64,000 bases of DNA from Camelus ferus (Eukaryota), in contig NC_045714.1 in assembly GCF_009834535.1 (NCBI RefSeq), positions 15,314,001 to 15,378,000 on the forward strand, written 5' to 3'. The notes under the pieces were generated by a model. It had not been told where the DNA came from. It ran no database searches and saw only the letters and a program-made list of their open reading frames with translations. This document shows, piece by piece, positions 77 through 24,972 of the stretch (positions are counted from its first letter, which is position 1; the number at the start of each line of letters is the position of its first letter). A program made the position numbers and the translations under genes.

Positions 77-9861
<9,785 letters not shown>

Positions 9862-9944
9862 CTGCAGGGCCTCGGGGTGCACACGGGGGGAATCTGGTGG
9901 GGAACAGGGGCTGAGGGGCCCTGAGCGGTCCATCCTGGTCTTTA

Positions 9945-9950
9945 ATTAAA
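9945..9950 (+). terminator. PRPF6 polyadenylation signal ATTAAA
   Basis: ATTAAA 84 nt after the stop codon, followed by GT/T-rich sequence. Confidence 0.7.
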
Positions 9951-11189
9951 GGTTTTCTAGGTAGTTGTGGGGTGAGTGACCTGCTGGTTTTCTCTGAGTC
10001 CCATCCCCCCCCCCCCCCCCCGTGTGTGCTTTGGCCACTCCCCAGTGTGGCCTGGGCTGTGCAGGGCTCAGGCTCACTTTCGAGGAGGCATCCTGCAGAC
10101 AGCCTGCGCCCCACGGAGGACGCCCAAGGGAAGAAGGAGCCTCACTGAGGCTTTGTGGAGAAGGTGCTGGGGTCACGTTCTGGGGAGAGGCCGTGCCTTG
10201 GGGGCAGCAGGTGGCTGGCCCTCCTGGCGACTCCAGTCCGTGTCCCCTCCTCCCCCCGTGCGTGTGCTCTCCCCAGGGCGGGCAGAGGGCCCCATATCAC
10301 AGGACTGCAGATGTGGGGGCTTTGCAGCCTCACTGAGAGCAGACAGGCCTGGCTCCCCGCAGTGCTACTGAGGACGTGAGTATGTGGGGAGTGAGTTTCT
10401 CCCATTTGCAGGTGAATTCATTTTTGCTAACTTATAATCAGCAGTTTTACCCTAAAGCACTTGTAACTGCTTCTCTCTAGACTGAAAGTGTATTCGTTAC
10501 TTGGGAGCCTTGAGTGTGTTTTCATCATGTAAGGATGAGACTTTCTTGGGCTCTGGATCCTTGCATGTGTGTTTGGTTGGAAATAGCCAGTTCTCTTGGA
10601 AGGGCTGTGTTGGCCATGGTTGGAGACATGTGGCCAGAGGTCAGAGGTGGTCCAGAGGCTGTGGGCCACGGAGAAGAGGCGTAGATTGTCATGTGTGATA
10701 ACAAGAAGGCCAGCTGGCTGTTGTTCCCACACATTCTCATAAGGAAAGGTCCCAGGGGGGCCCCTTGGTGCCTCATGGTGGGGTGAGCTCTCTCGTGGCG
10801 GCCAAGGTTGGGGTGCATACCTCTCCACGTCAGCACCTGGGGTGTGGGCATCTGTCCGGAGAGTGAGGGCCCTGCTGGGTCCACCTCCGATGTTCTGGCA
10901 GCCCCAAGGACAAGGCCAGCCCAGGACTGGACCAGACCGCCCTGTGTTGGGGTAGGAACTGCTGTTGCCCAGGCAGGCGACCTGGGCTGGGCCCCGCTCA
11001 TATGGGCCGACTCTGGGGGTCCGTCCTGTCCTCACCCAGAGAGGCCAGTCCTGGGGAACCATGCTGGAGGGTCTTAGGTGTTTTCACTGAAACTTGGGAG
11101 TTTCCTTTGATCTCTGGTGGTGGGGGGAGGGATCCCGCCCCTTACACTGAAGAGTGAGCCCTGAAGAGTTTAGAAGCTTGAAAGCCAGC

Positions 11190-11280
11190 CTGTCCCTATC
11201 AGATGTGGAAACTGAGGCCTAGGAAGGGGCAGTGACTTGGCTGCGGCCACAAGGCAGCTGTGCCCTGAGTCGGGTGTGGC
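11190..11280 (+). mobile_element. MIR remnant (similar remnants near 35140-35220, 50850-50900, 52140-52240, 59690-59890, 63880-63985)
   Basis: MIR core-like cagatgtggaaactgaggcctagg...gtgacttg...ccacaaggcag. Boundaries approximate. Confidence 0.55.
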
Positions 11281-12283
11281 TTCTGGGGGCACTTCCTCCA
11301 ACCTCCAGTCAGGTGAGGCCACCCGTGGGGCCTCTGAGAAGTTCCTGAGCATCTGGATTGTCCAGGGAACGTCTCCTTTCTCCTTTGCCTGGGGTGCTTC
11401 CCTCAGCACCTTGAGGTGGCGGTTACATCTCTCTTCTCCCTGGGAAACACCCCTTAGCTTTTCTTCGGCTGCTGCTTTCCAGTCCCAGCTCAAGGCGAGC
11501 AGGTTCCTCTGCTTCCTTGCTCTGAGGCCTGGGGTGGGGAGGTTGGGGGGTTGGCTCCCTGCAAGCCCTTTTGGGCCAGTGGCCATGCCCACCTCCCCAG
11601 TGATAGACCCCTTAGTCCCTGCAGGGGTGAGTAGCAGGAGGCACCTCTGCAGTGCTGGGCCAGCGGGGAGCCTGGGAAGTCCCACGCCTGGGACCTGCTG
11701 GGGCAGGACCCCCCCCCCCCCCGCCCCATGGCAGGGGAGGGAGCTGGGGTTGGGGGGTTAAGTCCTGCTCACCTGGTTCTGCCTGAGGCCAGGTTCCTGG
11801 AAGAGACAGCACCTGCTGACCACTGAGGAAGGCCCCTGCCTCTCCTCCCCTCCCCCAGCAGCGGGGCCCTGCACTGCCCTCTGCTCACCCAACACGCTCC
11901 CCCTCCTCCCCCCTGGGCAGAGCAGATATCCCGGGTCTGATGGCTTAATCCAAGAGCCACTGGGTGGGAAGACAGCCCAGTGGGGCTGGGCTCCAGGGTC
12001 AGGTTAATTGAAGAAGCGATTGGATATGGGGTGGGGAGACGTTGGGGGCAGGGCTGGGATCCTGGGGCCTCCCTCTGCTCCCTCCCTTCTTTGCTCAGAG
12101 GAGCCAACTTCAAAAGCCTTGTCTGCCTGCCGCCCATCTGCACGCTTGTAGCCCGCCAGGGAGCCCTGGTGGCCCGGCTTGGAGCAGGACCTGGAGTGGC
12201 AGCTACACTCCCCACCTGAGGACCCCAGGTCATGTGCGAGGCCCTGTGGTGGGAGTGAGGGAGAGCCTGACCCTGAGAGGCCC

Positions 12284-14532
12284 ATGGTGAGCAGCTGCGG
12301 GCTACTGGGGAGGGGGCTTACTCCGGCCAAGGGGCAGGGAGCCTGTGTGGCTGGGAGAGGCGCCCCACTGGGAAATCCCCCTGGGTTGCTGTCACTGAAG
12401 CCTGGCCCTGGGGGCCCTGGGGGCCCCTGCCTGGCCTTCCCACCACTGTTGAGAAGACTCCCTCCTGGTGCCAGACAGGCCTCCCCAGGACTCCCTGGTC
12501 AACCAGGCTGCCCCACTTGGACAGCACCTCCAGCATCTCCAGCTCTTGTCCTCACTGTGACCTCTGACCCTCAGCAGGCAGAGGGGCGACTCAGGGCGGG
12601 GGTGCGTGGGTTTCAAGACCTGGCCACAGCCAATTGCATCTGCTCTTCTGGGTGCCTCAGGCAGAAGCCCCCCCGCGGACTCCCAGCTCTCGTCCTGTGA
12701 GGTCAGGCTCCCCAGCCAGGGCTGGGAAGCAGAGTCGAGTCCTTGCCTGAGTCCTGAGTCTCACTGGGTTCACATGATTAATTTTCTGGTCACTGTGGAG
12801 TCCAGCCTGGGTGCTGGGAGCCGGGGACACGTGGCTCTTTCTCTTTGATGTTTGGGCTTGTGCTGAGGGTGGGTCTCTTCCCAGAGAGCCAGTTCCCTCC
12901 ATTCTGGGGGAGGGGAGGTCTGCAAGTGGAATGTTTGGTGAGGCGTAACATGGCCCCTTCCGCCCTTAGCCTCGGGCTTTCCCCAGGCCTTCCCCTTCTG
13001 AAGGGGTGTGGCCTTGAGCTCTGAGCCCTCACCCCTGTCCTGGTTGGGTTGGGGGTGCTGCCCAGCGGTAGAAGGGAGCAGGTCTGTTCCGCTCTCCTGC
13101 AGCGAAGGCAGAGCAACAGCCGTGCAGCCACTGCCCAGGGCACCCAAGGCCCCGCAGTGTGCTGAGGATTAGGGTGCTCAGGGCCCAGCTCCGGTGGGGG
13201 TGGGTCAGGGCATGGCCGGGGCGAGGCTGTGCTGAGGGTACTTCCTGCTATGGCTACCCCAGACCTAGCCAGCCCTGCCCTCCACAGGCCTGTGGGCACT
13301 AGAGCCCTCACACCTGTGCAGACCAGAGGTCCAGGTGCTCCTGCCCTGGGAAGCCTGTCTCTTTCCTGACCCCCAGCATTCACCCTGCGATCTCTGCATG
13401 AGTTGAGCTGTCCAGCGTGCAGACATTGTCCATCCTTCCCTAAACCTGCCAGACCCAGACCCACACCCAGAGCATTTGCTGCATGGCATGGTGATATCTC
13501 CATACCAGCTCACAGATTGTTCTGGGGTGGTCGGGGTGGGGTGGCCAAAGCACATTGCCTGGGGTGTTGCAGGAGGGAAGCCCCCTTCCACAGGCCTGGG
13601 TGCCCCACCCTGACCCGGTGTCCCTTGCAGGGGCCCCCCAAGCCTGCACTCTGGGCACTCCTGCTGGTGCTGCTGGGGACCACACAGGGCCGGGCCGGGC
13701 TCCGCACCTGCAGTGTCCCCGACGTGCTCCGCCACTACCGGGCAGTCATCTTCCAAGACCTGCAGGCCGCAGCGAGGTGGGTGGGGCCAGGGGCCGAAGG
13801 GACGGGGCTGGGCTCCAGACACCTCCATTTCGTTCAGAGAAACCTGACTGGAGCTGCGGCCTCCCGACGGCGGGGCCGGGTGGGAGCCTCCTGTGGGGCC
13901 CAGAAGGTATGGAGACACCCCCACCCAAGCCCTCCGTCCCCCTGAGGCCCCTTCACAGGGCTCGTCCTCCAGTTGCTTATTTCCTCCCCTCCCAGGAGCA
14001 CAGCATCCTACTGTCCATCCTGTCCCTGGGTCGGACCCTACGTGGGGCGGTGGCCCGGGGCCGCCGTCGGGCACTGGAGAAAGTGGCATGGACTGTGGCC
14101 ACGCGCACCGAGGCGGTGATGCAGCGCTACTGCTGGACGCTGCGCCAGGTGCGCGTCCCCGAGACCCCCATCCCATTCGCTCCCGCAGCCCCATGGCCTC
14201 ACAGCCTGGGGGCGCGAGTCGGGCCCACACCGTGCTGCGACTCCCCCAAGGGCTGGACTTGAGGGCGGGTGGGCCTGGGGACCCTGCCCACTCCCTGACC
14301 GAAGCGTCTCCGACAACAGAGCTGGCGGCCTCAGACGCGCCCTTCCCGGCGTCGAGGCGGCCGGAGGTGGCTCCTGCTACACGCCCTGGACACCATCGCC
14401 ACCTGCTGGGAGAAGCTCTTCGCACTGCGTGCAGCGGCCACGCAGCAGGGTGAAGAACGAGCGAGGCTGAGAACGAGCCTGACGGGGGCACAACCAACGC
14501 ATCGAAGCCTGTGCTCCCCACAGAGCCCATGA
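12284..14532 (+). CDS. C20orf204: C20orf204 orthologue; predicted secreted four-helix cytokine-like protein (214 aa as assembled)
   Basis: Coding exons 13631-13906, 13996-14148 and 14320-14532 (TGA), all phase 0. The initiator ATG must come from an upstream exon (best candidate ATG|gtgagc at 12284-12286). Spliced protein: M-GPPKPALWALLLVLLGTTQGRAGLRTCSVPDVLRHYRAVIFQDLQAAARW...SCGAQK|EHSILLSILSLGRTLRG...RTEAVMQRYCWTLRQ|SWRPQTRPSRRRGGRRWLLLHALDTIATCWEKLFALRA... It matches recalled human C20orf204 and its position between PRPF6 and SOX18. The ATG exon is inferred. Confidence 0.88.
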
Positions 14533-15730
14533 CCAGGAGACCCGATCCCACCTGGCCATGCTGGTCCCAGAAGGGCCCGCCCCCCTCGCCCCAAGGAGGC
14601 TCCGATAAATTGAGCTGGTGCTGCGGTCTGGTCTTCCCTTTCTTCACCTGCTCCTGTGGGGCCAGGCGGGGCTGGGCCGCCCCAGATCTGCACCTTGGTG
14701 GGGAGCGGGCCCTGGAGCCACCGACACACGTGGCGGGGGCCTGAGGAGACACTTTTCCTCCACACCTGGGCAGGGGCGGGAGCGGGGACAGTGCTCCCAG
14801 GCTCAGGCAGCAGGGGGCAGCTCGGGACCCTGGACGCGACTCCTGCTCAGTCCACGCCTCAGGCTTGGTGGAGGGGGGGGTCCCGCCACCCGGGGACTCC
14901 TGCCGCCCTAAAATGTGGCATATCCGGCCTGCTCCACTCTGGAATGGGGGAAGGGGTGGAAATGGAGGGGAGGGGAAGGCTGAGCTTTGTGCATTCAGAG
15001 CAAAACAACCGGATAAAGGAAATGGGCCTGAAGGGAAGCTGGGCCAGGCCGTTTCCTGCAGCCCCGGGAAGGGTGGCGGCAGCCCCCTCTGTGGGACTGG
15101 ACAGGCTGGCCAGGGACACACTGGCTTGTGTCCTGGGACCCAATGTTTGCTTGGCGGGGTTGGGGGTCGCTAATCCCTGGACTCCCCCACGTGCAGCTGC
15201 ATAGGCCTGGAGGGATGGCCCCCCTGTAATGAAAGCCTCTGGAGGAGGGGAGACAGTTGAGCAAGCAGAGCACCTGGCCAAAGGTGGAGGGCCTGGTGGA
15301 CACAACACCTGTCATCACTCTTCTCCTTGACAGGTGGGCGTACCCCGGAGGCACTCAAGCAGGCCTTCCCTCTGGGCTACCCCGCAGAACGAAGGCAGGC
15401 AGGAGGTGCAGAAAGGTCTTCCTGATGGAGCTGGCACAACTGCCCCGACCCAGCCCTGCTCTGTGTGTCAACATACGCAGTCTGTGCAGCAGGCATGACT
15501 GTTCTACAGACCAGGGAGCTGAGGCTCTGGGAGGTCACAGGACAGCCAGAAAGCTAAGAGCTGGGATGAGAGCCAGGCCCCAGCAGCGCTACACCGCACA
15601 TGTGCCCTGGGCACAAAATGGGGTCCTCAGTGTGATTCAGTGACCTTATAGGCTCCCAGGCCACGAGGTACAGCTCACCTAGGGGGCCATGCTCTCTGAG
15701 TGTGAGGATGACGCCTGTGGTACGTACGTA

Positions 15731-15733
<3 letters not shown>

Positions 15734-15769
<36 letters not shown>
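15734..15769. repeat. (AC)18 microsatellite preceded by short (TACG)n
   Basis: Read directly from the sequence. Confidence 0.95.
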
Positions 15770-15771
<2 letters not shown>

Positions 15772-17019
15772 GCATGGAGCATTCTCACAGCACTTGTGCT
15801 CCGCACACTCCCTGGTGTGGTCAGTGGGCTGTGGGGAAGGGCGCGCTGTGGGGGCTCCAGCTGGGGCTCGAGCACTGTGAGGGGGGAGCTTGGCAGTGCC
15901 CGCCCAGCAGGGTCTAAGCCGAGGAGGGACGTCAGAGGCAGGGTTGAGTCAGATCCCTGTCCCTGCACTGTGCGTGGAGGTGGCGTGTGCAGGGGGCCTG
16001 TGTGGTGAGGTGGGGCTGAAGGAGGTGGGCCTGGACACGAAGGGGTGAGGGGAGGTCCAGCCAGCCCTAAGGTCCTGGCCTCAGACTCCACTTGGGAAAC
16101 CCTGATGAGTGTGGTGAGGGGAGCAGGCCCATGCCTGATGGGCTACTCCCCTCGCTGGGCTCCCGCCAGGCAAGCCTTGGGGTGCAGTCAGGTGTCCAGC
16201 TAGGAGGTAAAAGGCCCACTCTGGTTGGGGCACAAGGCATGGCACAGCTGAGCTGGGCCTGGGGAAGGTCAGTAAGAGTCCACAGGCCTGGGTGCAGGGA
16301 CTGGCTCCTGGCACTTGGGCCTGCCCTAGCCCGAGGGCCTGGGGGGAAGAGCATGCCTCTCCTAACAGCATCTGGATGTGGCTTCCAGGGCCGCCCCTCC
16401 ATCCACCCATGCCTGAAGCAGGTGCAAACCAGCCACAGTTTTGGGGCAGCTGTGGGGAGGGGTGGGGCCTCAGAGTTATGGGTGGACAATCCCCATCTGA
16501 GTCCTGGGCTGCAGACACATGAGTGGACAAGATACTCCTGCACCCTGGCCCCACTGTTCCTTCCTGGGGGCTCCTGCCAGAGCTGCCCTAGAATGTGGAT
16601 GTGAGTGAGTGTGTATGTGGCGTGTACGTGCAGGTGTGTGCAGGTGTGTGTGCTTGTGTGCGTGCACACACGGGTCCAGGCTCCCTGACCTGGCGCAGCC
16701 TCCTGCCTCCCGCCTCCCCTTGCCTGGCCGAGCTTCCCTCTCAGGCAGCCCCTCCTGATTTGTAACCCTGGTCTGCCCTGGGTGTGGGGGCTGGAGGCCT
16801 GTGGCCTGAGCTCTCAGAACCCAGTGTCCCCCACCCCCATCTCACTTCTAAGTTGTTCTCAGCACAACACCCCCCCCCCCAACAGACACAGTGTCCACCT
16901 TCTGCACCTTTTCTTGAGGCCTCAGTGCTGGGCAGAGGCTCTGCACATCTTGCCCAGTCCTGCTTCTGCCAATCCCCAGATGAGGGGCCAGCCTCTGTCC
17001 CCACATCTCAGAAACCATC

Positions 17020-17427
17020 TGCATCAGTCTCCTAGGGCTGCTGTATAACAAGCTGTGTGGCTTAACAATAGAAGTTTCTTCTCTCGAAGTTCTGCAGGCC
17101 AGACGTCCAGAATCAGGATCACTGACCTGAAATCTGGTGTTGCCGGGCTGTGCTCCCTCCAGGGGCTCCAGGGGAGCATCTGCTCTTGCTTCTTGCAGCT
17201 TCTGGTGGCTCCAAGTACTCCCTGGCTCGCAGCTACATTGCTCCGATGTCTGCCTCTTTCTTCTCTCTCTTACGAGCATCTTTGCCACTGGATTTAGGGC
17301 CACCTGGATGATCTCCTCACTTCAAGATCCTTAATCACATCTGTCAGGACCCTTTTTCCAAATAAGATCCTGCTTACAAGTTCTGGGAGGTGGATGTATC
17401 TCTGGGGCCGCCATTCAACCCACTTCA
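17020..17427 (-). mobile_element. MLT1-type (MaLR) solo LTR
   Basis: Begins tgcatcagtctcctagggctgctgtataaca and ends ccattcaacccacttca, with typical internal ggatttagggcc...ccttaatcacatctg...cctttttccaaataag. About 410 bp. Confidence 0.8.
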
Positions 17428-19804
17428 GCATCTTTCTTCATGCAGTTGGGAGCAGGGTGGGCTTCTGGCTTCTGGGACAAAGGTCACTTGTCCAGGCTGG
17501 GGACAGACCCGGTCTGGGGCAGGCGCAGAGCCACACTGAGCTGCTGAGAGACACAGAGACATGGGATGGGGGGGAAGCTGGGGCCGCCCTGCTCAGACCC
17601 CATTAGAGGACTCAGAGGTGCCTGCTCCTCAGACTCCGACACCAGGGCACCCCGTGAGCTGCTCTGATGTTCACTGGCTGAAACTGACCAGAGCCGACAC
17701 AGACTTGGAAGGAGACTAAACCGTAGGGACAGAGCCATTGGCCGTGGGGCCACGCAGGCCAGACTGTGGGGGTTGTGACCTGGTGGGCAGGCCCTGTCTT
17801 TCGAGGAATCGAGGCCTCGAGGCATCTGCCAGGCCTGGGTGCACTGCCCTCCCTGTCAAGAAAGGGGCCCGAGCCTGGTTCTTCCTCCGTAAAACGCTGT
17901 TTTTGGGGCACATGCGTGGTGGGGTTGTCCTAGCCCACACACGTGCCTTCTCAGCTGCTTCCATGGAGGTGGAGGGGTGGGGCCCAGAAGGAGGGGCTGT
18001 GCCAGGGTGGCAGATGGGGCCGCAGGGCACTGGCCAGGGAGCCAGACCCCCCATGTGCAGTGCCGCAGGGAGGGGCCAGGCAGGCTTTGAAGGGTAGTCT
18101 GGGTCCCACGACCTCCCCAGACTGGGAGCCTTTGAAAGAACATCTGGAACACGGGCGACAGGCTAACTAGTCTCTGGATTTGAAAACCAAAAAGTGAATC
18201 CCAACTTTGCCACTTGTGTGTTCCCCGTTCCTCACCCTGCTCCTCTCTCTCCCCACCCCCACCTCCCACCTCCGCCCCTTCCCAGGCTTCCAAGGGGCTG
18301 CAGGGTGGGGTCTGTGCCAGCCCAGAGTGCTGGCCCTTCGGAGGGCTGCAGACTGCCTTTGTCCTGCCCTAGGCCAGCTCCTGGGCTCCCCGGCACCTCC
18401 CCCTCCCCTCCCCCCTCCCCTCCCCCACTGGCCACCACCCTAGCCCCTCTGAGCACCAGGAGGTGGTGGGTGGTGGAGGGAAGGACCTGCCATGCCAGGC
18501 CCTGGAGGCGCACTTCCCATTTTCACGGAGCACGGCTGTGGGACAGGACGTGAGTTAGCCAGGACTTGCATCTGGTGCCGGGTGCTGTGCGGGCCCTGGA
18601 GGAAACACCTGCACCTGACCTAAAAGGGCATCTGGCCCTTGCCTGCGAGCCCGAGTGTGGGGTCCCCCAGCCCCGCAGGCATGCAAGGAGGTGCCTGCCC
18701 CAGCTGTGGCTGACGCAGAAACAAAGAGGCTCCCACTCCAGGAAGCAAAGCAGAGACTCACGGGAGGGGGAATACCAGGTGTTGGAGACCATTGTCCCTG
18801 CCAGTGGCCTGCGGGACCCTGGGGGGCGTCCAGGCTCAGTCCCCATCCTGCCCCCTGCCTAGGAATAGACCCAGCTTTGTAAACACAGAAACAAACAACC
18901 AGTGTGCTCCGCCTCCCCCCCCCCCCCCCAGTTAAAGTTGGGAAGAAGCAGCAGGGATCCTGCACCTGCTGAGTGAAATGAGCCCTTGTCTAGGGGGAAA
19001 TGAGGAGGTCAGGACCTGGAGGCCGGACTCCCTGGGGTTGGGCGCTGGTCCTTGGGTCACCTCCGGCCTGGAGGGGCCCAGCTAGGCCTCCCTCCATGGC
19101 TCAGTTGTGGCTTGGGGGTGAGGCGGCCAGGACGCCCCGCCAGGTGAGCAGGCCTGTCCTCCTCAGCCCCAGCGTCCCCTCCCCTGCCCGGCCTGCGCGG
19201 GGCGCGAGGCCAGGGGTTCGGCTGCGGCCGGAGATAAGCGCCGCACGCACCAGCCGCTGCTTCCTGCGCTTCCTCGCACCGCTGCTGCCGCGGGCCCCTT
19301 CCTGTTTTCTCGCGCGGGCGGGCTGGGGCGTGGGGATGGGGCGGGGTCGTGGGGAACAGGGCGGGGTCCTGTGATACTGGGCAGTGCCGGACTGAGCGCG
19401 GGACTGTGGGGCACACAGGGCGGGGTCGTGGGAGATAAAGCAAGGCTGGGCTTCCCTGGGAGGCTGAGCGCCGGTGCAGAAGTAGAGGGGGTGGGAGGAA
19501 GCTGAGCGGGGCCGTGCTCTGAAACACAAAGGAGGAATCTCAGTGCTCCCCCCTCCCCCCCGCCCAGTTCTGGGCAGGGAACTCGCACACACTTGGCCAA
19601 GACCCTCTGTGGACTGGACTGGAGCCTGCTCCTTGGGGCCCCTCCCCAGTCTGGAGTGAGCTGAGGATTGAGTCTTGGTGTTGGGGGCCTCGCTGGGGTT
19701 AGAGGTCAGCTGCTCTGACTTTCTTGGGTAACTGCTCCAGCATATGGATTTAAGGTACTTAACCTGTTTGCTCAGACTTAGAGATACGGATTTATGTTAC
19801 TTTA

Positions 19805-23678: not shown

Positions 23679-24972
23679 CTAGCCGGAGATGCACGCGCTG
23701 TAGTAGACGGCAGAGCTGGCGTCGGACAGCGCAGCGATCAGGCTGCTCTCCTCCGGGCAGGACATGGCGCGCGGGCCCAGCTTGGCCAGCGCCACGTGGT
23801 ACGGGAGCCCGGCGGCATCGGGTCGAGTCCGGCTGCAGTTGAGGTACTGGTCGAACTCGGTGAGGTCCACGTCGGCCCACAGGTCGGCGGTGGGACCCAG
23901 CGGCTCGGCGCCCTCCAGCGGCGGGGCCTCGGGCGGCGGGGACAGCGGGCCGGGGTACGGGCTCGGGCCGGGCGCGCCCAGGGCGCCGTAGTAGAGGCCG
24001 GAGAGCGGCGCGGCGGGGGCGGGCGCGGTCCTGAGCGCCTCGGCCAGGGGCGCCCCGTAGCAGCCGCCCGGGTCCCGGGGCAACTCGGCGGTGGCGTAGG
24101 GCGCGCGGAAGGGTCGCAGCGCGCAGTCCTCGGGCACCGCAGGCGGAGGGAAGAAAGCGGCGTCGCCGGGCTCCAGGCCGTCCAGCGGCGAGCGCTCGGG
24201 CGTGGGCAGCCCCAGGCCGTCGAACTCAGCGCCCAACGGGGGCAGCTCGCGGAAGGCACGGGCTGCGCCAGTCGCCACGGGGAAGGGCTCGGGCGGCGGC
24301 GGCGGCGGCGGCGGCGCCAGGCCCGGGAGCAGGAGGCCGGGCTCCGGCCGCCGGGCCTTGCGCGCCTGCTTCTTGCGGCGCGGCCGGTACTTGTAGTTGG
24401 GGTGGTCGCGCAGGTGTTGCACACGCAGCCGTTCCGCCTCCTCCACGAAGGGCCGCTTCTCCACGGTGCTCAGCTCCTTCCACGCCTTGCCTGCGGGCCA
24501 CCGGCGCGGGTCAGCAGGCTGCCGTCGGGCGGGCGGACGGCCGAGCGCAGCGTGTGCCCTGGCCCACCCCCGCGCGAGGTACCCCCGCCCAGCCTGCCCG
24601 CCCGCGCCACTCACCTAGCATCTTGCTGAGCACCGCGTTGTGCAGGTCCGGGTTCTGCTGTGCCAGCCGCTTGCGCTCGTCCTTCGCCCACACCATGAAG
24701 GCGTTCATGGGCCGCCGGATGCGTGACTCGTCAGCCGCCTGGCGCTCCCCGCGGCCGGCCGGGCTGAGGCCATAGCGCCCCGGCTCAGGGCTGCGCGGCG
24801 GGCTGCGCGGCGGGCTGGGCGGCGAAGCGGGCGCGGCGGGCGCGGCGAGGGCGGCGGGGGCGGCGGGGAGGCCGCGCTGCTCAGCGGCGGCCCCGGATCC
24901 CGGGGCCCATGCACAGTCGCGGCGGGCTGGCGGGTCGTCTTGTGCGCCGTAGCCGGGCGGCGATCTCTGCAT
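23679..24972 (-). CDS. SOX18: SRY-box transcription factor 18 (SoxF), 389 aa
   Basis: Exon 1 CDS 24615-24972 (MQRSPPGYG...HNAVLSKML), 124-bp GT-AG intron 24491-24614 inside the HMG box, exon 2 23679-24490. Contains [28 protein letters not shown], the EFDQYL motif and the C-terminus [12 protein letters not shown]. Confidence 0.98.

What the first reader, a model, noticed from the sequence alone, without database searches (positions are those of the whole stretch)
13631..14453. C20orf204 product looks like an unrecognised third member of the IL-7/TSLP cytokine family
Seen in sequence: the spliced protein has a signal peptide (ALWALLLVLLG), an N-glycosylation sequon NLT (13841-13849), four amphipathic segments and four core cysteines (13709, 13892, 14131, 14404). 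Against IL-7 and TSLP recalled from memory, all four segments align. Helix A: CSVPDVLRHYRAVIFQDL vs TSLP CDFEKIKAAYLSTISKDL (C, Y, I and DL in register). AB loop and helix B: HLHFVQR...CGAQKEHSIL...GRTLR vs IL-7 EFNFFKR..CDANKEGMFL...ARKLR. Helix C: ATRTEAVMQRYC vs TSLP AMKTKAALAIWC. Helix D: LLLHALDTIATCWEKLF vs IL-7 FLKRLLQEIKTCWNKIL (7/17 identical, including TCWxK). The four cysteines correspond to IL-7 mature C2, C47, C92 and C141; the C34/C129 pair is absent. Inference: a secreted short-chain four-helix cytokine paralogous to IL-7/TSLP. I recall this gene only as uncharacterised, or as a tumour-associated nuclear protein from a former lncRNA locus. I cannot check whether the relationship has already been published.
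Basis: partly seen in the sequence, partly recalled or inferred. Interest (0 to 1): 0.92.

Follow-up and report, generated by a model that had tools for sequence, protein, structure and literature searches.

The report
Overlooked IL-7-like cytokine gene (C20orf204)
This camel gene, known only as an uncharacterised or "nucleolar tumour" protein, encodes a conserved vertebrate protein that looks like a secreted four-helix cytokine whose only detectable relative of known structure is interleukin-7, so it may be a missing signalling molecule of the immune system.

Summary
The window, from a camelid, carries C20orf204 as an ATG-only exon (12284-12286) plus exons 13631-13906, 13996-14148 and 14320-14532. 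The signal-peptide-like start, the NLT sequon and all four cysteine codons are at the stated coordinates.

The family is not a young lncRNA product. Orthologues run from skate and sturgeon to mammals, with the four Cys and the CW-K-L motif invariant.

- **Sequence:** a taxonomically balanced family profile searched against all PDB sequences hits only interleukin-7 (E=4e-5, nearly full length; next hit E=1.3). Two other profiles also put IL-7 first (E=0.0077 and 0.043). In per-sequence Pfam scans, TSLP (7 of 67 members, best E=3e-4) and IL7 (3 of 67) are the only cytokine families that appear, both below the curated cut-offs.
- **Structure:** AlphaFold gives four long helices (pTM 0.68). Foldseek finds only non-significant matches to long-chain cytokines such as G-CSF and IL-6, and no IL-7 or TSLP in the top 50.
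- **Literature:** published work shows EndoH-sensitive glycoforms and partial ER localisation of the human protein, so part of it enters the ER. PROST (2023) already called it interleukin- or growth-hormone-like.

Verdict: probably a secreted helical cytokine homologous to IL-7. Receptor and secretion remain untested.

The parts
12284..12286 (+). Initiator ATG, the only coding bases of the first coding exon (ATG|GTGAGC)
   Evidence: The sequence context is identical to the annotated start of the alpaca gene (L002 position 3001) and is one of three ATG|GT candidates. The crane orthologue has the same ATG-only exon, ATG|GTGAGT. No RNA evidence was obtained for the camel.
13631..13906 (+). Coding exon 2 (92 codons, phase 0): rest of the signal peptide, helix A, AB loop and first turns of helix B
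   Evidence: AG acceptor, GT donor. It is 99% identical to alpaca P0001.
13646..13678 (+). Hydrophobic core of the signal peptide (ALWALLLVLLG). The predicted signal covers residues 1-23, ending G-R-A
   Evidence: A hydrophobic N-terminal stretch is present in orthologues from skate to mammals that have a complete N-terminus. The cleavage site is inferred from the -3/-1 rule, not computed with SignalP.
13709..13711 (+). Cys28 (C1), just before helix A. It sits at a position equivalent to IL-7 Cys2 and TSLP Cys34
   Evidence: Invariant in A4. The C-to-Y spacing of 9 is the same as in TSLP and is 10 in IL-7 (from memory of the IL-7 N-terminus; the HMMER alignment starts at chain position 12, so Cys2 is not shown).
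13715..13780 (+). Helix A (residues 30-51)
   Evidence: AlphaFold model m13bf97052ba2, helix 8-29, pLDDT about 80-90. Mapping.
13766..13837 (+). Placental-only 24-residue piece of the AB loop, probably an exonised intron
   Evidence: Absent in platypus, marsupial, bird, reptile, amphibian and fish orthologues. It sits where the crane gene has an intron. It still shows AG|GTGGGT near its 5' side and TTCGTTCAG at its 3' end. Low pLDDT.
13841..13849 (+). N-glycosylation sequon N-L-T
   Evidence: The Asn is invariant in placentals, and an N-x-S/T sequon is kept in most placentals and in birds, turtles, platypus, sturgeon and skate. The human protein has EndoH-sensitive glycoforms (PMC7969625).
13892..13894 (+). 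Cys89 (C2), at the start of helix B in the motif C-x-x-x-K|E. HMMER aligns it to IL-7 Cys47
13996..14148 (+). Coding exon 3 (51 codons, phase 0): helix B, short BC loop, helix C
   Evidence: The crane has an exon of the same 51 codons. Helices 66-91 and 97-123 of the model.
14131..14133 (+). Cys139 (C3), at the end of helix C, two residues from IL-7 Cys92 in the HMMER alignments
14320..14532 (+). Last coding exon: CD loop, helix D, camelid-specific C-terminal extension and stop TGA (14530-14532)
   Evidence: The translation is identical to the C-terminus of Camelus ferus P0060.
14338..14367 (+). Polybasic cassette (R-P-S-R-R-R-G-G-R-R) at the end of the CD loop
   Evidence: A basic run before helix D is present in all lineages. 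It is comparable to the basic, furin-site cassette in the TSLP CD loop (PMC5382266).
14401..14418 (+). T-C-W-E-K-L in helix D, containing Cys173 (C4, 14404-14406). It aligns to IL-7 T-C-W-N-K-I (Cys141 and the buried Trp)
   Evidence: C, W, K and L are invariant in A4.
14455..14529 (+). Camelid read-through tail (25 residues, with a fifth Cys) beyond the point where other mammals stop

Best explanation
C20orf204 encodes a secretory, N-glycosylated, disulfide-stabilised four-helix-bundle cytokine. It belongs to an ancient jawed-vertebrate family that shares ancestry with interleukin-7 and, more distantly, TSLP.

**Proposed mechanism.**
1. The N-terminal signal peptide takes the chain into the ER.
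2. Asn72 is glycosylated there.
3. Cys28-Cys139 tie the N-terminus to the end of helix C, and Cys89-Cys173 tie the start of helix B to helix D, as the Cys2-Cys92 and Cys47-Cys141 bridges do in IL-7.
4. The invariant helix-D Trp packs in the core, as in IL-7.
5. The released protein engages a pair of type I cytokine receptor chains and signals through JAK/STAT. An IL-7R-alpha-containing receptor is the first candidate.
6. The polybasic CD loop may serve for protease processing or glycosaminoglycan binding, as proposed for TSLP and IL-7.

**Shown here:** gene structure, conservation, four predicted helices, and profile similarity to IL-7.

**Shown by others, for the human protein:** EndoH-sensitive glycoforms and partial ER localisation.

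**Inferred:** signal-peptide cleavage, disulfide pairing, up-up-down-down topology, secretion, and receptor class.
For: **Family age and conservation.**
- An exhaustive profile search found 79 relatives, all of this one family.
- Named members include skate, sturgeon, lungfish, newt, caecilian, turtles, alligator, birds, platypus and opossum.
- C28, Y37, C139 and C-W-x-K-L are invariant and C89 nearly so (at least 90%) in 67 sequences.
- Helices are more conserved than loops.

**Homology to IL-7.** hmmsearch of family profiles against all PDB sequences gave:
- Alignment A3: IL-7 3di2_A at E=4e-5, 26.4 bits, profile 34-163 against IL-7 12-149; next hit E=1.3.
- Alignment A5: IL-7 at E=0.0077; next hit 0.24.
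- Alignment A4: IL-7 is the only hit below E=10, at 0.043.
- The alignments put Y on Y12, C2 on Cys47 with K-E following, L-K-V in helix C, C3 two residues from Cys92, and TCWEKL on TCWNKI.

**Pfam.** Of 24,736 models, the only cytokine families hit by the 67 members are TSLP (7 members, best E=3.2e-4, collinear matches in rodents, a bird and sturgeon) and IL7 (3 members).

**Structure.**
- AlphaFold on the 67-sequence alignment gives pLDDT 74.6 and pTM 0.68.
- It has helices 8-29, 66-91, 97-123 and 135-168, a 36-residue AB loop and a 5-residue BC loop.
- The best TM matches are all up-up-down-down cytokines.
- Language-model neighbours are all helical cytokine clusters for both a mammal and a turtle query.

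**Gene structure.**
- The crane has ATG / signal plus helix A / 21-codon AB loop / 51-codon helices B plus C / helix D, all phase 0.
- From my own knowledge, this is the layout of IL-2/IL-4/IL-7-type genes.

**Entry into the ER.**
- Human C20orf204-Myc gives 22, 24 and 26 kDa bands.
- The upper two bands are removed by EndoH, and part of the protein co-stains with KDEL (PMC7969625).
Against: - Foldseek against the PDB gave no match with E<=0.001, and neither IL-7 nor TSLP was in the top 50. The best superpositions are long-chain cytokines at TM 0.50-0.53.
- The Pfam hits are below the curated cut-offs: TSLP 21.1 bits against 27, and IL7 12.9 bits for the one member seen in detail against 26.8.
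- The placental-only profile, a rodent profile, a single rat sequence and each half of the profile alone all fail to find IL-7 or TSLP. The signal therefore needs the full length and taxonomic breadth.
- TSLP chains in the PDB are never hit.
- The IL-7 Cys34-Cys129 bridge is absent.
- The mature protein is extremely basic (pI 11.8 in camel, 9.7-11.1 in the non-placental orthologues computed), which is unusual for a cytokine.
- The only functional paper places the human protein mainly in nucleoli, bound to nucleolin.
- Secretion was never assayed.
- No RNA evidence was obtained for the camel gene.
- No model coordinates were available, so S-S distances and topology could not be measured.
Confidence: 0.62

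Rival explanations
1. It is a secreted helical cytokine, but it is not specifically related to IL-7/TSLP. It would belong with, or converge on, the long-chain group (G-CSF/IL-6/EPO/GH-like) or form an independent lineage.
For: - Foldseek's best TM scores are G-CSF at 0.50-0.53, followed by prolactin, IL-6, CLCF1, IL-27p28 and IL-11.
- The predicted helices are 22-34 residues long.
- The nearest ESM Atlas clusters are EPO/TPO, the IL-10 family and IFN-lambda.
- PROST aligned it to somatotropin.
Against: - All Foldseek E-values are at least 0.48, so none is significant.
- No long-chain or class II cytokine family appears in Pfam or PDB sequence searches, whereas IL-7 is significant and TSLP and IL7 recur.
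- Helices B and C share one exon. From my own knowledge this is typical of short-chain genes and not of IL-6/G-CSF/GH genes.
- Language-model features only say 'vertebrate helical cytokine' and change family with the query.
Confidence: 0.18
2. Its physiological role is intracellular. It would be an arginine-rich nucleolar protein that binds nucleolin and rRNA and promotes proliferation, as published, and the cytokine likeness would be irrelevant or vestigial.
For: - PMC7969625 reports nucleolar staining, nucleolin pull-down, rRNA binding and a growth effect on overexpression.
- The protein has 32 Arg and a pI near 11.8.
Against: - A hydrophobic signal-like N-terminus, four invariant Cys and a conserved N-x-S/T sequon have been kept since the common ancestor of jawed vertebrates. 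This makes little sense for a nuclear protein.
- The same paper shows EndoH-sensitive glycoforms and KDEL co-staining, which require ER translocation.
- The medium was not examined.
- An overexpressed basic protein that fails to translocate would be expected to collect in nucleoli and to bind acidic nucleolin and RNA non-specifically (my inference).
Confidence: 0.15
3. It is not a functional coding gene but a fortuitous ORF in the former LINC00176 lncRNA locus.
For: The locus was historically annotated as a lncRNA, many gene models are poor or mislabelled, and no camel RNA evidence was obtained.
Against: - Orthologous ORFs with conserved exon structure exist in skate, sturgeon, lungfish, amphibians, reptiles, birds and mammals.
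- The helix B plus C exon is exactly 51 codons in both camel and crane.
- Cys and Trp are invariant.
- The protein was detected with peptide antibodies in human cells.
Confidence: 0.02

Closest known systems
Interleukin-7 (Pfam PF01415; PDB 3DI2/3DI3)
   Same: - It is the only significant PDB sequence match of the family profile, and the match covers nearly the full length.
- The Cys positions are equivalent to IL-7 Cys2, Cys47, Cys92 and Cys141.
- The C-x-x-x-K-E motif opens helix B.
- T-C-W-x-K sits in helix D, with the Trp that is buried in the IL-7 core (PMC7396566).
- It is a basic, glycosylated protein with a signal peptide and long AB and CD loops.
- The exon layout has helices B and C in one phase-0 exon.
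   Different: - It lacks the Cys34-Cys129 bridge.
- It falls below the Pfam IL7 cut-off.
- The predicted helices are longer.
- It is much more arginine-rich.
- It is not a Foldseek top hit.
- It lies at a different locus, next to PRPF6 and SOX18 (human 20q13.33), whereas IL7 is on 8q21 (my own knowledge).
- Receptor use is unknown.
Thymic stromal lymphopoietin (Pfam PF15216; PDB 5J11, 4NN5)
   Same: - Helix A is in register: C, then Y nine residues later, then I and D-L.
- Helix C ends in a Cys.
- A polybasic cassette sits in a long CD loop.
- Sub-threshold collinear Pfam hits occur in 7 of 67 members from three lineages.
- TSLP and IL-7 themselves show only 'marginal sequence similarity' to each other (PMC5382266).
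   Different: - No PDB TSLP chain is hit by any profile.
- The helix D motif differs, because TSLP has its Cys at the start of helix D and no TCW.
- The TSLP Cys69-Cys75 loop bridge is absent.
- The match is below the gathering score.
Long-chain four-helix cytokines (G-CSF, IL-6, IL-11, CLCF1, IL-27p28, prolactin, GH, EPO/TPO)
   Same: - They give the best structural superpositions (TM 0.43-0.53 over about 165-180 columns).
- The helix lengths are similar.
- They are the language-model neighbours.
- PROST aligned the protein to somatotropin.
   Different: - No sequence or profile signal was found.
- The Foldseek E-values are non-significant.
- The exon organisation is different (my own knowledge).
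- The disulfide pattern is not that of G-CSF, IL-6 or GH.
C20orf204-189AA as published (nucleolin-binding nucleolar protein of hepatocellular carcinoma)
   Same: It is the same gene product. The human orthologue is about 70% identical over exon 2 to primate sequences. The N-glycosylation site at residues 72-74 is the same.
   Different: The published model ignores the signal peptide and the cysteines. Its own EndoH and KDEL data point to the secretory pathway.

Membership tests
Helical type I cytokines (four-helix bundle) | N-terminal signal peptide and secretory routing | tested here: met
   A basic n-region, an 11-residue hydrophobic core and a small-residue c-region (G-R-A) are present. This arrangement is kept from skate to mammals. 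The human protein has EndoH-sensitive glycoforms and KDEL co-staining (PMC7969625). SignalP was not available and release into medium has never been assayed.
Helical type I cytokines (four-helix bundle) | Four amphipathic helices with long AB and CD connections and a short BC hairpin | tested here: met
   The AlphaFold model has pTM 0.68. It has helices 8-29, 66-91, 97-123 and 135-168, an AB loop of 36 residues and a BC loop of 5 residues.
Helical type I cytokines (four-helix bundle) | [quoted passage not shown] | tested here: inconclusive
   The best TM scores (0.50-0.53) are to G-CSF and other up-up-down-down cytokines, but all Foldseek E-values are at least 0.48.
Interleukin-7 family | Significant sequence or profile similarity to IL-7 | tested here: met
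   hmmsearch against PDB sequences gave E=4e-5, 0.0077 and 0.043. IL-7 is the top or only hit each time and the alignment is collinear from helix A to helix D. It is not found with the placental-only profile or with half profiles.
Interleukin-7 family | Pfam PF01415 gathering score (26.8 bits) | tested here: not met
   Three of 67 members hit, with best E=0.045. The one seen in detail scored 12.9 bits.
Interleukin-7 family | Cysteines of the Cys2-Cys92 and Cys47-Cys141 bridges | tested here: met
   C2 aligns to Cys47 and C4 to Cys141 exactly. C3 lies two residues from Cys92. C1 precedes the conserved Tyr by 9 residues, against 10 in IL-7 (my recollection of the IL-7 N-terminus). All four are conserved across the family (three invariant, C89 in at least 90% of sequences). 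The actual pairing was not tested.
Interleukin-7 family | Third bridge Cys34-Cys129 | tested here: not met
   Amniote sequences have no Cys at either position. Anamniotes have a different extra pair, at the end of helix B and in the CD loop.
Interleukin-7 family | Single buried Trp in helix D next to the Cys (T-C-W) | tested here: met
   C-W is invariant in 67 sequences. It aligns to IL-7 C141-W142. The role of the Trp in IL-7 is described in PMC7396566.
Interleukin-7 family | Binding to IL-7R-alpha plus the common gamma chain, and the pi-helical turn in helix A | not testable with these tools
   No complex prediction, no coordinates and no binding assay were available.
TSLP family | Pfam PF15216 gathering score (27 bits) | tested here: not met
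   Seven of 67 members hit. The best is rat at 21.1 bits, E=3.2e-4. The sturgeon match spans profile positions 4-124 of 125. No PDB TSLP chain was hit by any profile.
TSLP family | Basic cassette in a long, flexible CD loop | tested here: met
   A polybasic run lies before helix D in every lineage, with low pLDDT around it. The TSLP feature is described in PMC5382266.
TSLP family | Binding to TSLPR (CRLF2) and then IL-7R-alpha | not testable with these tools
   This needs binding or signalling assays, or complex modelling.
Long-chain cytokines (IL-6/G-CSF/GH/EPO) | Sequence or profile similarity to any member family | tested here: not met
   No such family appeared among the Pfam hits of the 67 members at E<=10 or among the PDB hits.
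Long-chain cytokines (IL-6/G-CSF/GH/EPO) | Structural similarity | tested here: inconclusive
   TM is 0.43-0.53 but the E-values are 0.5-2.4.

The most novel reading that the evidence does not exclude
C20orf204 is a third natural ligand of an IL-7R-alpha-containing receptor, paired with the common gamma chain, CRLF2 or an unassigned chain. It would also be a 2R ohnologue of IL7. It would then account for IL-7-independent but IL-7R-dependent lymphocyte development in humans (PMC11444196). It would also be a candidate relative of the unidentified il7r/crlf2 ligand inferred genetically in zebrafish (PMC6936713).
Probability: 0.15. Interest if true: 0.95.

Novelty: new member of a known kind. Interest (0 to 1): 0.8.

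Why it matters
New vertebrate-wide helical cytokines are almost never found any more, and IL-7 and TSLP are both drug targets or drugs. If the reading is right, several things follow.

- **A well-studied locus is misfiled.** LINC00176/C20orf204 is cited in many reviews as a lncRNA-encoded nucleolar micropeptide. It would actually be an ancient secreted signalling protein.
- **Two open questions become testable with a named gene.**
  - Human IL-7 deficiency is milder than IL-7R deficiency.
  - Zebrafish need an unidentified cytokine acting through il7r/crlf2.
- **The proliferative effect reported in hepatocellular carcinoma cells might be autocrine cytokine signalling** rather than a nucleolar function.

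Even if the receptor is not IL-7R-alpha, an orphan cytokine conserved across jawed vertebrates, from cartilaginous fishes to mammals, implies an unassigned receptor pairing.

Tried and rejected
1. AlphaFold with placental sequences only gave a poor model (pLDDT 50, pTM 0.28). I discarded it. The 67-sequence vertebrate alignment was needed.
2. The placental-only profile against the PDB and single proteins against Pfam showed nothing related to cytokines. This would have wrongly refuted the idea.
3. The N-terminal half profile, the C-terminal half profile, a muroid-rodent profile and the rat sequence alone did not find IL-7 or TSLP. The match is therefore distributed and weak per segment, and the polybasic loop alone attracts BTF3 rather than cytokines.
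4. ESM Atlas look-alikes give the class (helical cytokine) but not the family.
6. A phmmer word search with sturgeon found only sturgeons. The exhaustive profile search found no ray-finned fish other than sturgeon. Absence from teleosts is not proven.
7. Literature searches for the 8q/20q paralogon and for IL7 exon boundaries returned nothing usable. Those arguments stay as recollection.
8. Profile-profile comparison (hhalign) with IL-7 and TSLP alignments was not run. No tool returned those proteins as referable ids, and I did not type long sequences.
9. Model coordinates are not exposed, so I could not compute Cys-Cys distances or superpose directly on 3DI2 or 5J11.
10. I considered whether the placental insert (13766-13837) is still an intron.
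   - The GT at 13777 to the AG at 13837 gives 61 nt, which shifts the frame into a stop.
   - An in-frame 57-nt option (13781-13837) would be unusually short.
   - I therefore treated the insert as coding.
Full report
**What is in the window.** The window is camelid DNA.
- An 8.3-kb alpaca locus aligns to window 9304-17637 at 95.5% identity.
- The last-exon translation is identical to a Camelus ferus protein.
- Translation of the stated region gives three coding exons on the + strand, with canonical AG/GT boundaries at the three introns and all in phase 0:
  - 13631-13906 (92 codons)
  - 13996-14148 (51 codons)
  - 14320-14532, including the stop
- The protein begins M-G-P-P-K-P. The ATG is a one-codon coding exon at 12284-12286 (ATG|GTGAGC), in the same sequence context as the annotated alpaca start.
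In camelids the frame continues for 25 more residues to TGA 14530-14532.
- Flanking genes are the PRPF6 3' end (about 9.86 kb), SOX18 on the minus strand (23679-24969), a TCEA2 exon (about 42.4 kb) and an RGS19 exon (about 45.36 kb). From memory, this is the order of human 20q13.33.

**The family is old and constrained.**
- A word-indexed search found 65 mammalian orthologues, all labelled 'uncharacterized protein C20orf204 homolog' and without any Pfam domain.
- An exhaustive HMMER search of 1.84 billion cluster representatives with a placental profile found 79 proteins, all of this family.
- Source names place the distant members in platypus, opossum, owl, turtles, alligator, caecilian, newt, lungfish, sturgeon and skate.
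- In a 67-sequence alignment of mature regions, C28, Y37, I97, C139 and C-W-x-K-L are invariant, and C89 is kept in at least 90% of sequences. Helices are better conserved than loops.
- The N-x-S/T sequon is kept in most lineages.
- No ray-finned fish other than sturgeon was found. This is absence of evidence only.

**Gene structure.** In the crane locus L001 the gene lies directly downstream of PRPF6. Its coding exons, all phase 0, are:

| Exon | Content | Size |
|---|---|---|
| 1 | ATG only (ATG\|GTGAGT) | 1 codon |
| 2 | signal peptide plus helix A | 45 codons |
| 3 | AB loop, ending C-R-S-D-K | 21 codons |
| 4 | helices B and C | 51 codons |
| 5 | CD loop plus helix D | last exon |

- The helix B plus C exon has exactly 51 codons in both camel and crane.
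- Camel exon 2 equals crane exons 2 and 3 joined by 24-26 extra codons (window 13766-13837), placed exactly at the position of the bird intron.
- That extra piece still carries AG|GTGGGT near its 5' side and TTCGTTCAG at its 3' end. It is present in placentals only, so it looks like an exonised intron.
- The layout 'helix A / small AB-loop exon / helices B and C together / helix D, all phase 0' is, from my own knowledge, the layout of IL-2/IL-4/IL-7-type genes and not of IL-6/G-CSF/GH-type genes.

**Sequence tests of the IL-7/TSLP idea.**
- Single proteins and the placental-only profile gave nothing.
- With taxonomic breadth the picture changed:

| Profile | Members | Result against 177,635 distinct PDB sequences |
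|---|---|---|
| A4 | 67 sequences | IL-7 (3di2_A) is the only hit below E=10, at E=0.043 |
| A5 | 22 non-placental sequences | IL-7 at E=0.0077; next hit 0.24 |
| A3 | 13 sequences, skate to mammals | IL-7 at E=4e-5, 26.4 bits, profile 34-163 on IL-7 12-149; next hit E=1.3 |

- The alignments are collinear from helix A to helix D. They superpose:
  - Q-Y in helix A
  - C-x-x-x-K-E at the start of helix B (IL-7 Cys47)
  - L-K-V in helix C
  - the helix-C Cys, two residues from Cys92
  - T-C-W-E-K-L on T-C-W-N-K-I (Cys141 and the buried Trp)
- In the reverse direction, each of the 67 members was scanned against all 24,736 Pfam models. The only cytokine families to appear are:
  - TSLP: 7 members, best E=3.2e-4 in rat; a near full-length collinear match in sturgeon and a partial one (profile 5-100 of 125) in a manakin
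  - IL7: 3 members, best E=0.045
- All of these fall below the curated cut-offs.
- Half profiles, a rodent profile and a single rat sequence fail. The similarity is therefore real by E-value, but it is spread thinly over the whole chain.
- IL-7 and TSLP themselves share only 'marginal sequence similarity' (PMC5382266). A third paralogue would therefore not be expected to pass either family's threshold.

**Structure.**
- AlphaFold2 on the 67-sequence alignment gave mean pLDDT 74.6 and pTM 0.68.
- It has helices 8-29, 66-91, 97-123 and 135-168 of the mature chain, a low-confidence 36-residue AB loop, a 5-residue BC turn and a short basic CD loop.
- Foldseek against the PDB gave no significant hit. 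The best TM scores (0.43-0.53) are G-CSF, prolactin, IL-6, CLCF1, IL-27p28 and IL-11. IL-7 and TSLP are not in the top 50.
- ESM Atlas neighbours of a peccary and a turtle orthologue are all helical-cytokine clusters (EPO/TPO, IL-10 family, IFN-lambda, IL-34, IFN-gamma), and again not IL-7 or TSLP.
- So fold and learned features say 'helical cytokine', and only sequence profiles say 'IL-7'.
- The Cys positions fit an up-up-down-down bundle. C1 at the start of helix A and C3 at the end of helix C lie at the same pole, as do C2 at the start of helix B and C4 in the second half of helix D. This is an inference, because the coordinates could not be read.

**Literature.**
- The only functional study calls the human protein nucleolar and nucleolin-binding (PMC7969625). 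The same paper reports 22, 24 and 26 kDa species whose upper bands disappear with EndoH, and partial KDEL co-staining.
- N-glycans are added in the ER lumen, so part of the protein is translocated. The medium was not examined.
[quoted passage not shown] Cytokine likeness has therefore been noted in print.
- Nine papers in the searchable library mention both the gene and 'interleukin'. Of these, only PROST links it to cytokines, and none links it to IL-7 or TSLP. Searches for 'IL-7-like' found only TSLP.
- Reviews up to 2026 still list it as a lncRNA-encoded nucleolar micropeptide.

**Interpretation.**
- The best reading (about 0.6) is a secreted, glycosylated, two-disulfide, four-helix cytokine that shares ancestry with IL-7 and, less clearly, TSLP. 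It would act through type I cytokine receptors.
- I keep 'works like a cytokine' apart from 'is a member of the IL-7 or TSLP families'.
- It fails both Pfam thresholds and lacks one IL-7 bridge. I therefore file it as a new, related family and not as a member of either.
- Receptor identity is open. IL-7R-alpha is the obvious first test, with a probability of about 0.15 that it is a true ligand.
- The alternatives are a helical cytokine of another lineage (0.18), a genuinely intracellular nucleolar protein (0.15) and a non-functional ORF (0.02).
- Two further leads rest on my memory only and were not verified here:
  - the coincidence of the phase-0 intron after C-x-x-x-K with the start of human IL7 exon 4
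  - the location of IL7 (8q21.13) and C20orf204 (20q13.33) in the same 2R paralogon (STMN2/STMN3, TPD52/TPD52L2, ZBTB10/ZBTB46, SOX17/SOX18, TCEA1/TCEA2, RGS20/RGS19, OPRK1/OPRL1)

**Relevance.**
- Human IL-7 deficiency is milder than IL-7R deficiency, which suggests 'other IL-7R-binding cytokines' (PMC11444196).
- Zebrafish genetics predict an unidentified il7r/crlf2 ligand (PMC6936713).
- A conserved IL-7-like orphan makes both questions directly testable.

Noticed in passing
window 13766-13837 (compare L001 13181-13409): The 24-residue AB-loop piece found only in placentals sits exactly where the crane gene has a phase-0 intron. It still shows AG|GTGGGT near its 5' side and TTCGTTCAG at its 3' end, so it looks like an exonised, shrunken intron. 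Platypus and marsupial predictions lack it. One marsupial-like prediction (P0081) reads through a similar 20-residue piece.
   Followed up: partly
window 14449-14532: Camelids read past the point where other mammals stop. The camel adds 25 residues, including a fifth Cys, and ends at TGA 14530-14532. The alpaca runs to 243 aa.
   Followed up: yes
window 14310-14322; L002: The alpaca has a NAGNAG acceptor (CAGCAG) before the last exon, which gives an extra Gln. The camel has AACAG and only the distal site.
   Followed up: yes
window 12284-12286; L001 10001-10003: The first coding exon contributes only the ATG (ATG|GTGAG) in camel, alpaca and crane. This unusual arrangement has been conserved for more than 300 million years. 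It probably explains why many automatic gene models start at wrong upstream ATGs and give proteins of 215-330 aa.
   Followed up: partly
P0115, P0128, P0129, P0133 (caecilian, sturgeon, newt, skate): Anamniote orthologues carry an extra Cys pair, one at the end of helix B and one in the CD loop. This suggests a third disulfide that amniotes lost. The skate has 13 Cys in the mature region.
   Followed up: no
window 23679-24969 (-), about 42415 (+), about 45360 (-), and up to about 9860 (+): The neighbouring genes are SOX18 (HMG box plus Sox17/18 central domain), a TCEA2 exon, an RGS19 RGS-domain exon and the PRPF6 3' end. PRPF6 adjacency is also seen in the crane (L001).
   Followed up: partly
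P0013, P0140: Some orthologues are mislabelled after their neighbours in public records: hyena 'PRP6 factor, partial' and turtle 'transcription elongation factor A (SII), 2'.
   Followed up: no
window 13265-15121 (-): A 618-aa open frame (GTG start) lies antisense to the whole gene. It is most likely a by-product of 65% G+C and was not examined further.
   Followed up: no
   Followed up: no
literature (PMC10628470): The bovine orthologue C13H20orf204 is listed among the most up-regulated genes in WC1.1+ gamma-delta T cells of cattle infected with Mycobacterium bovis. This hints at expression in immune cells. The log2 fold change of 22.6 looks like an on/off artefact.
   Followed up: no
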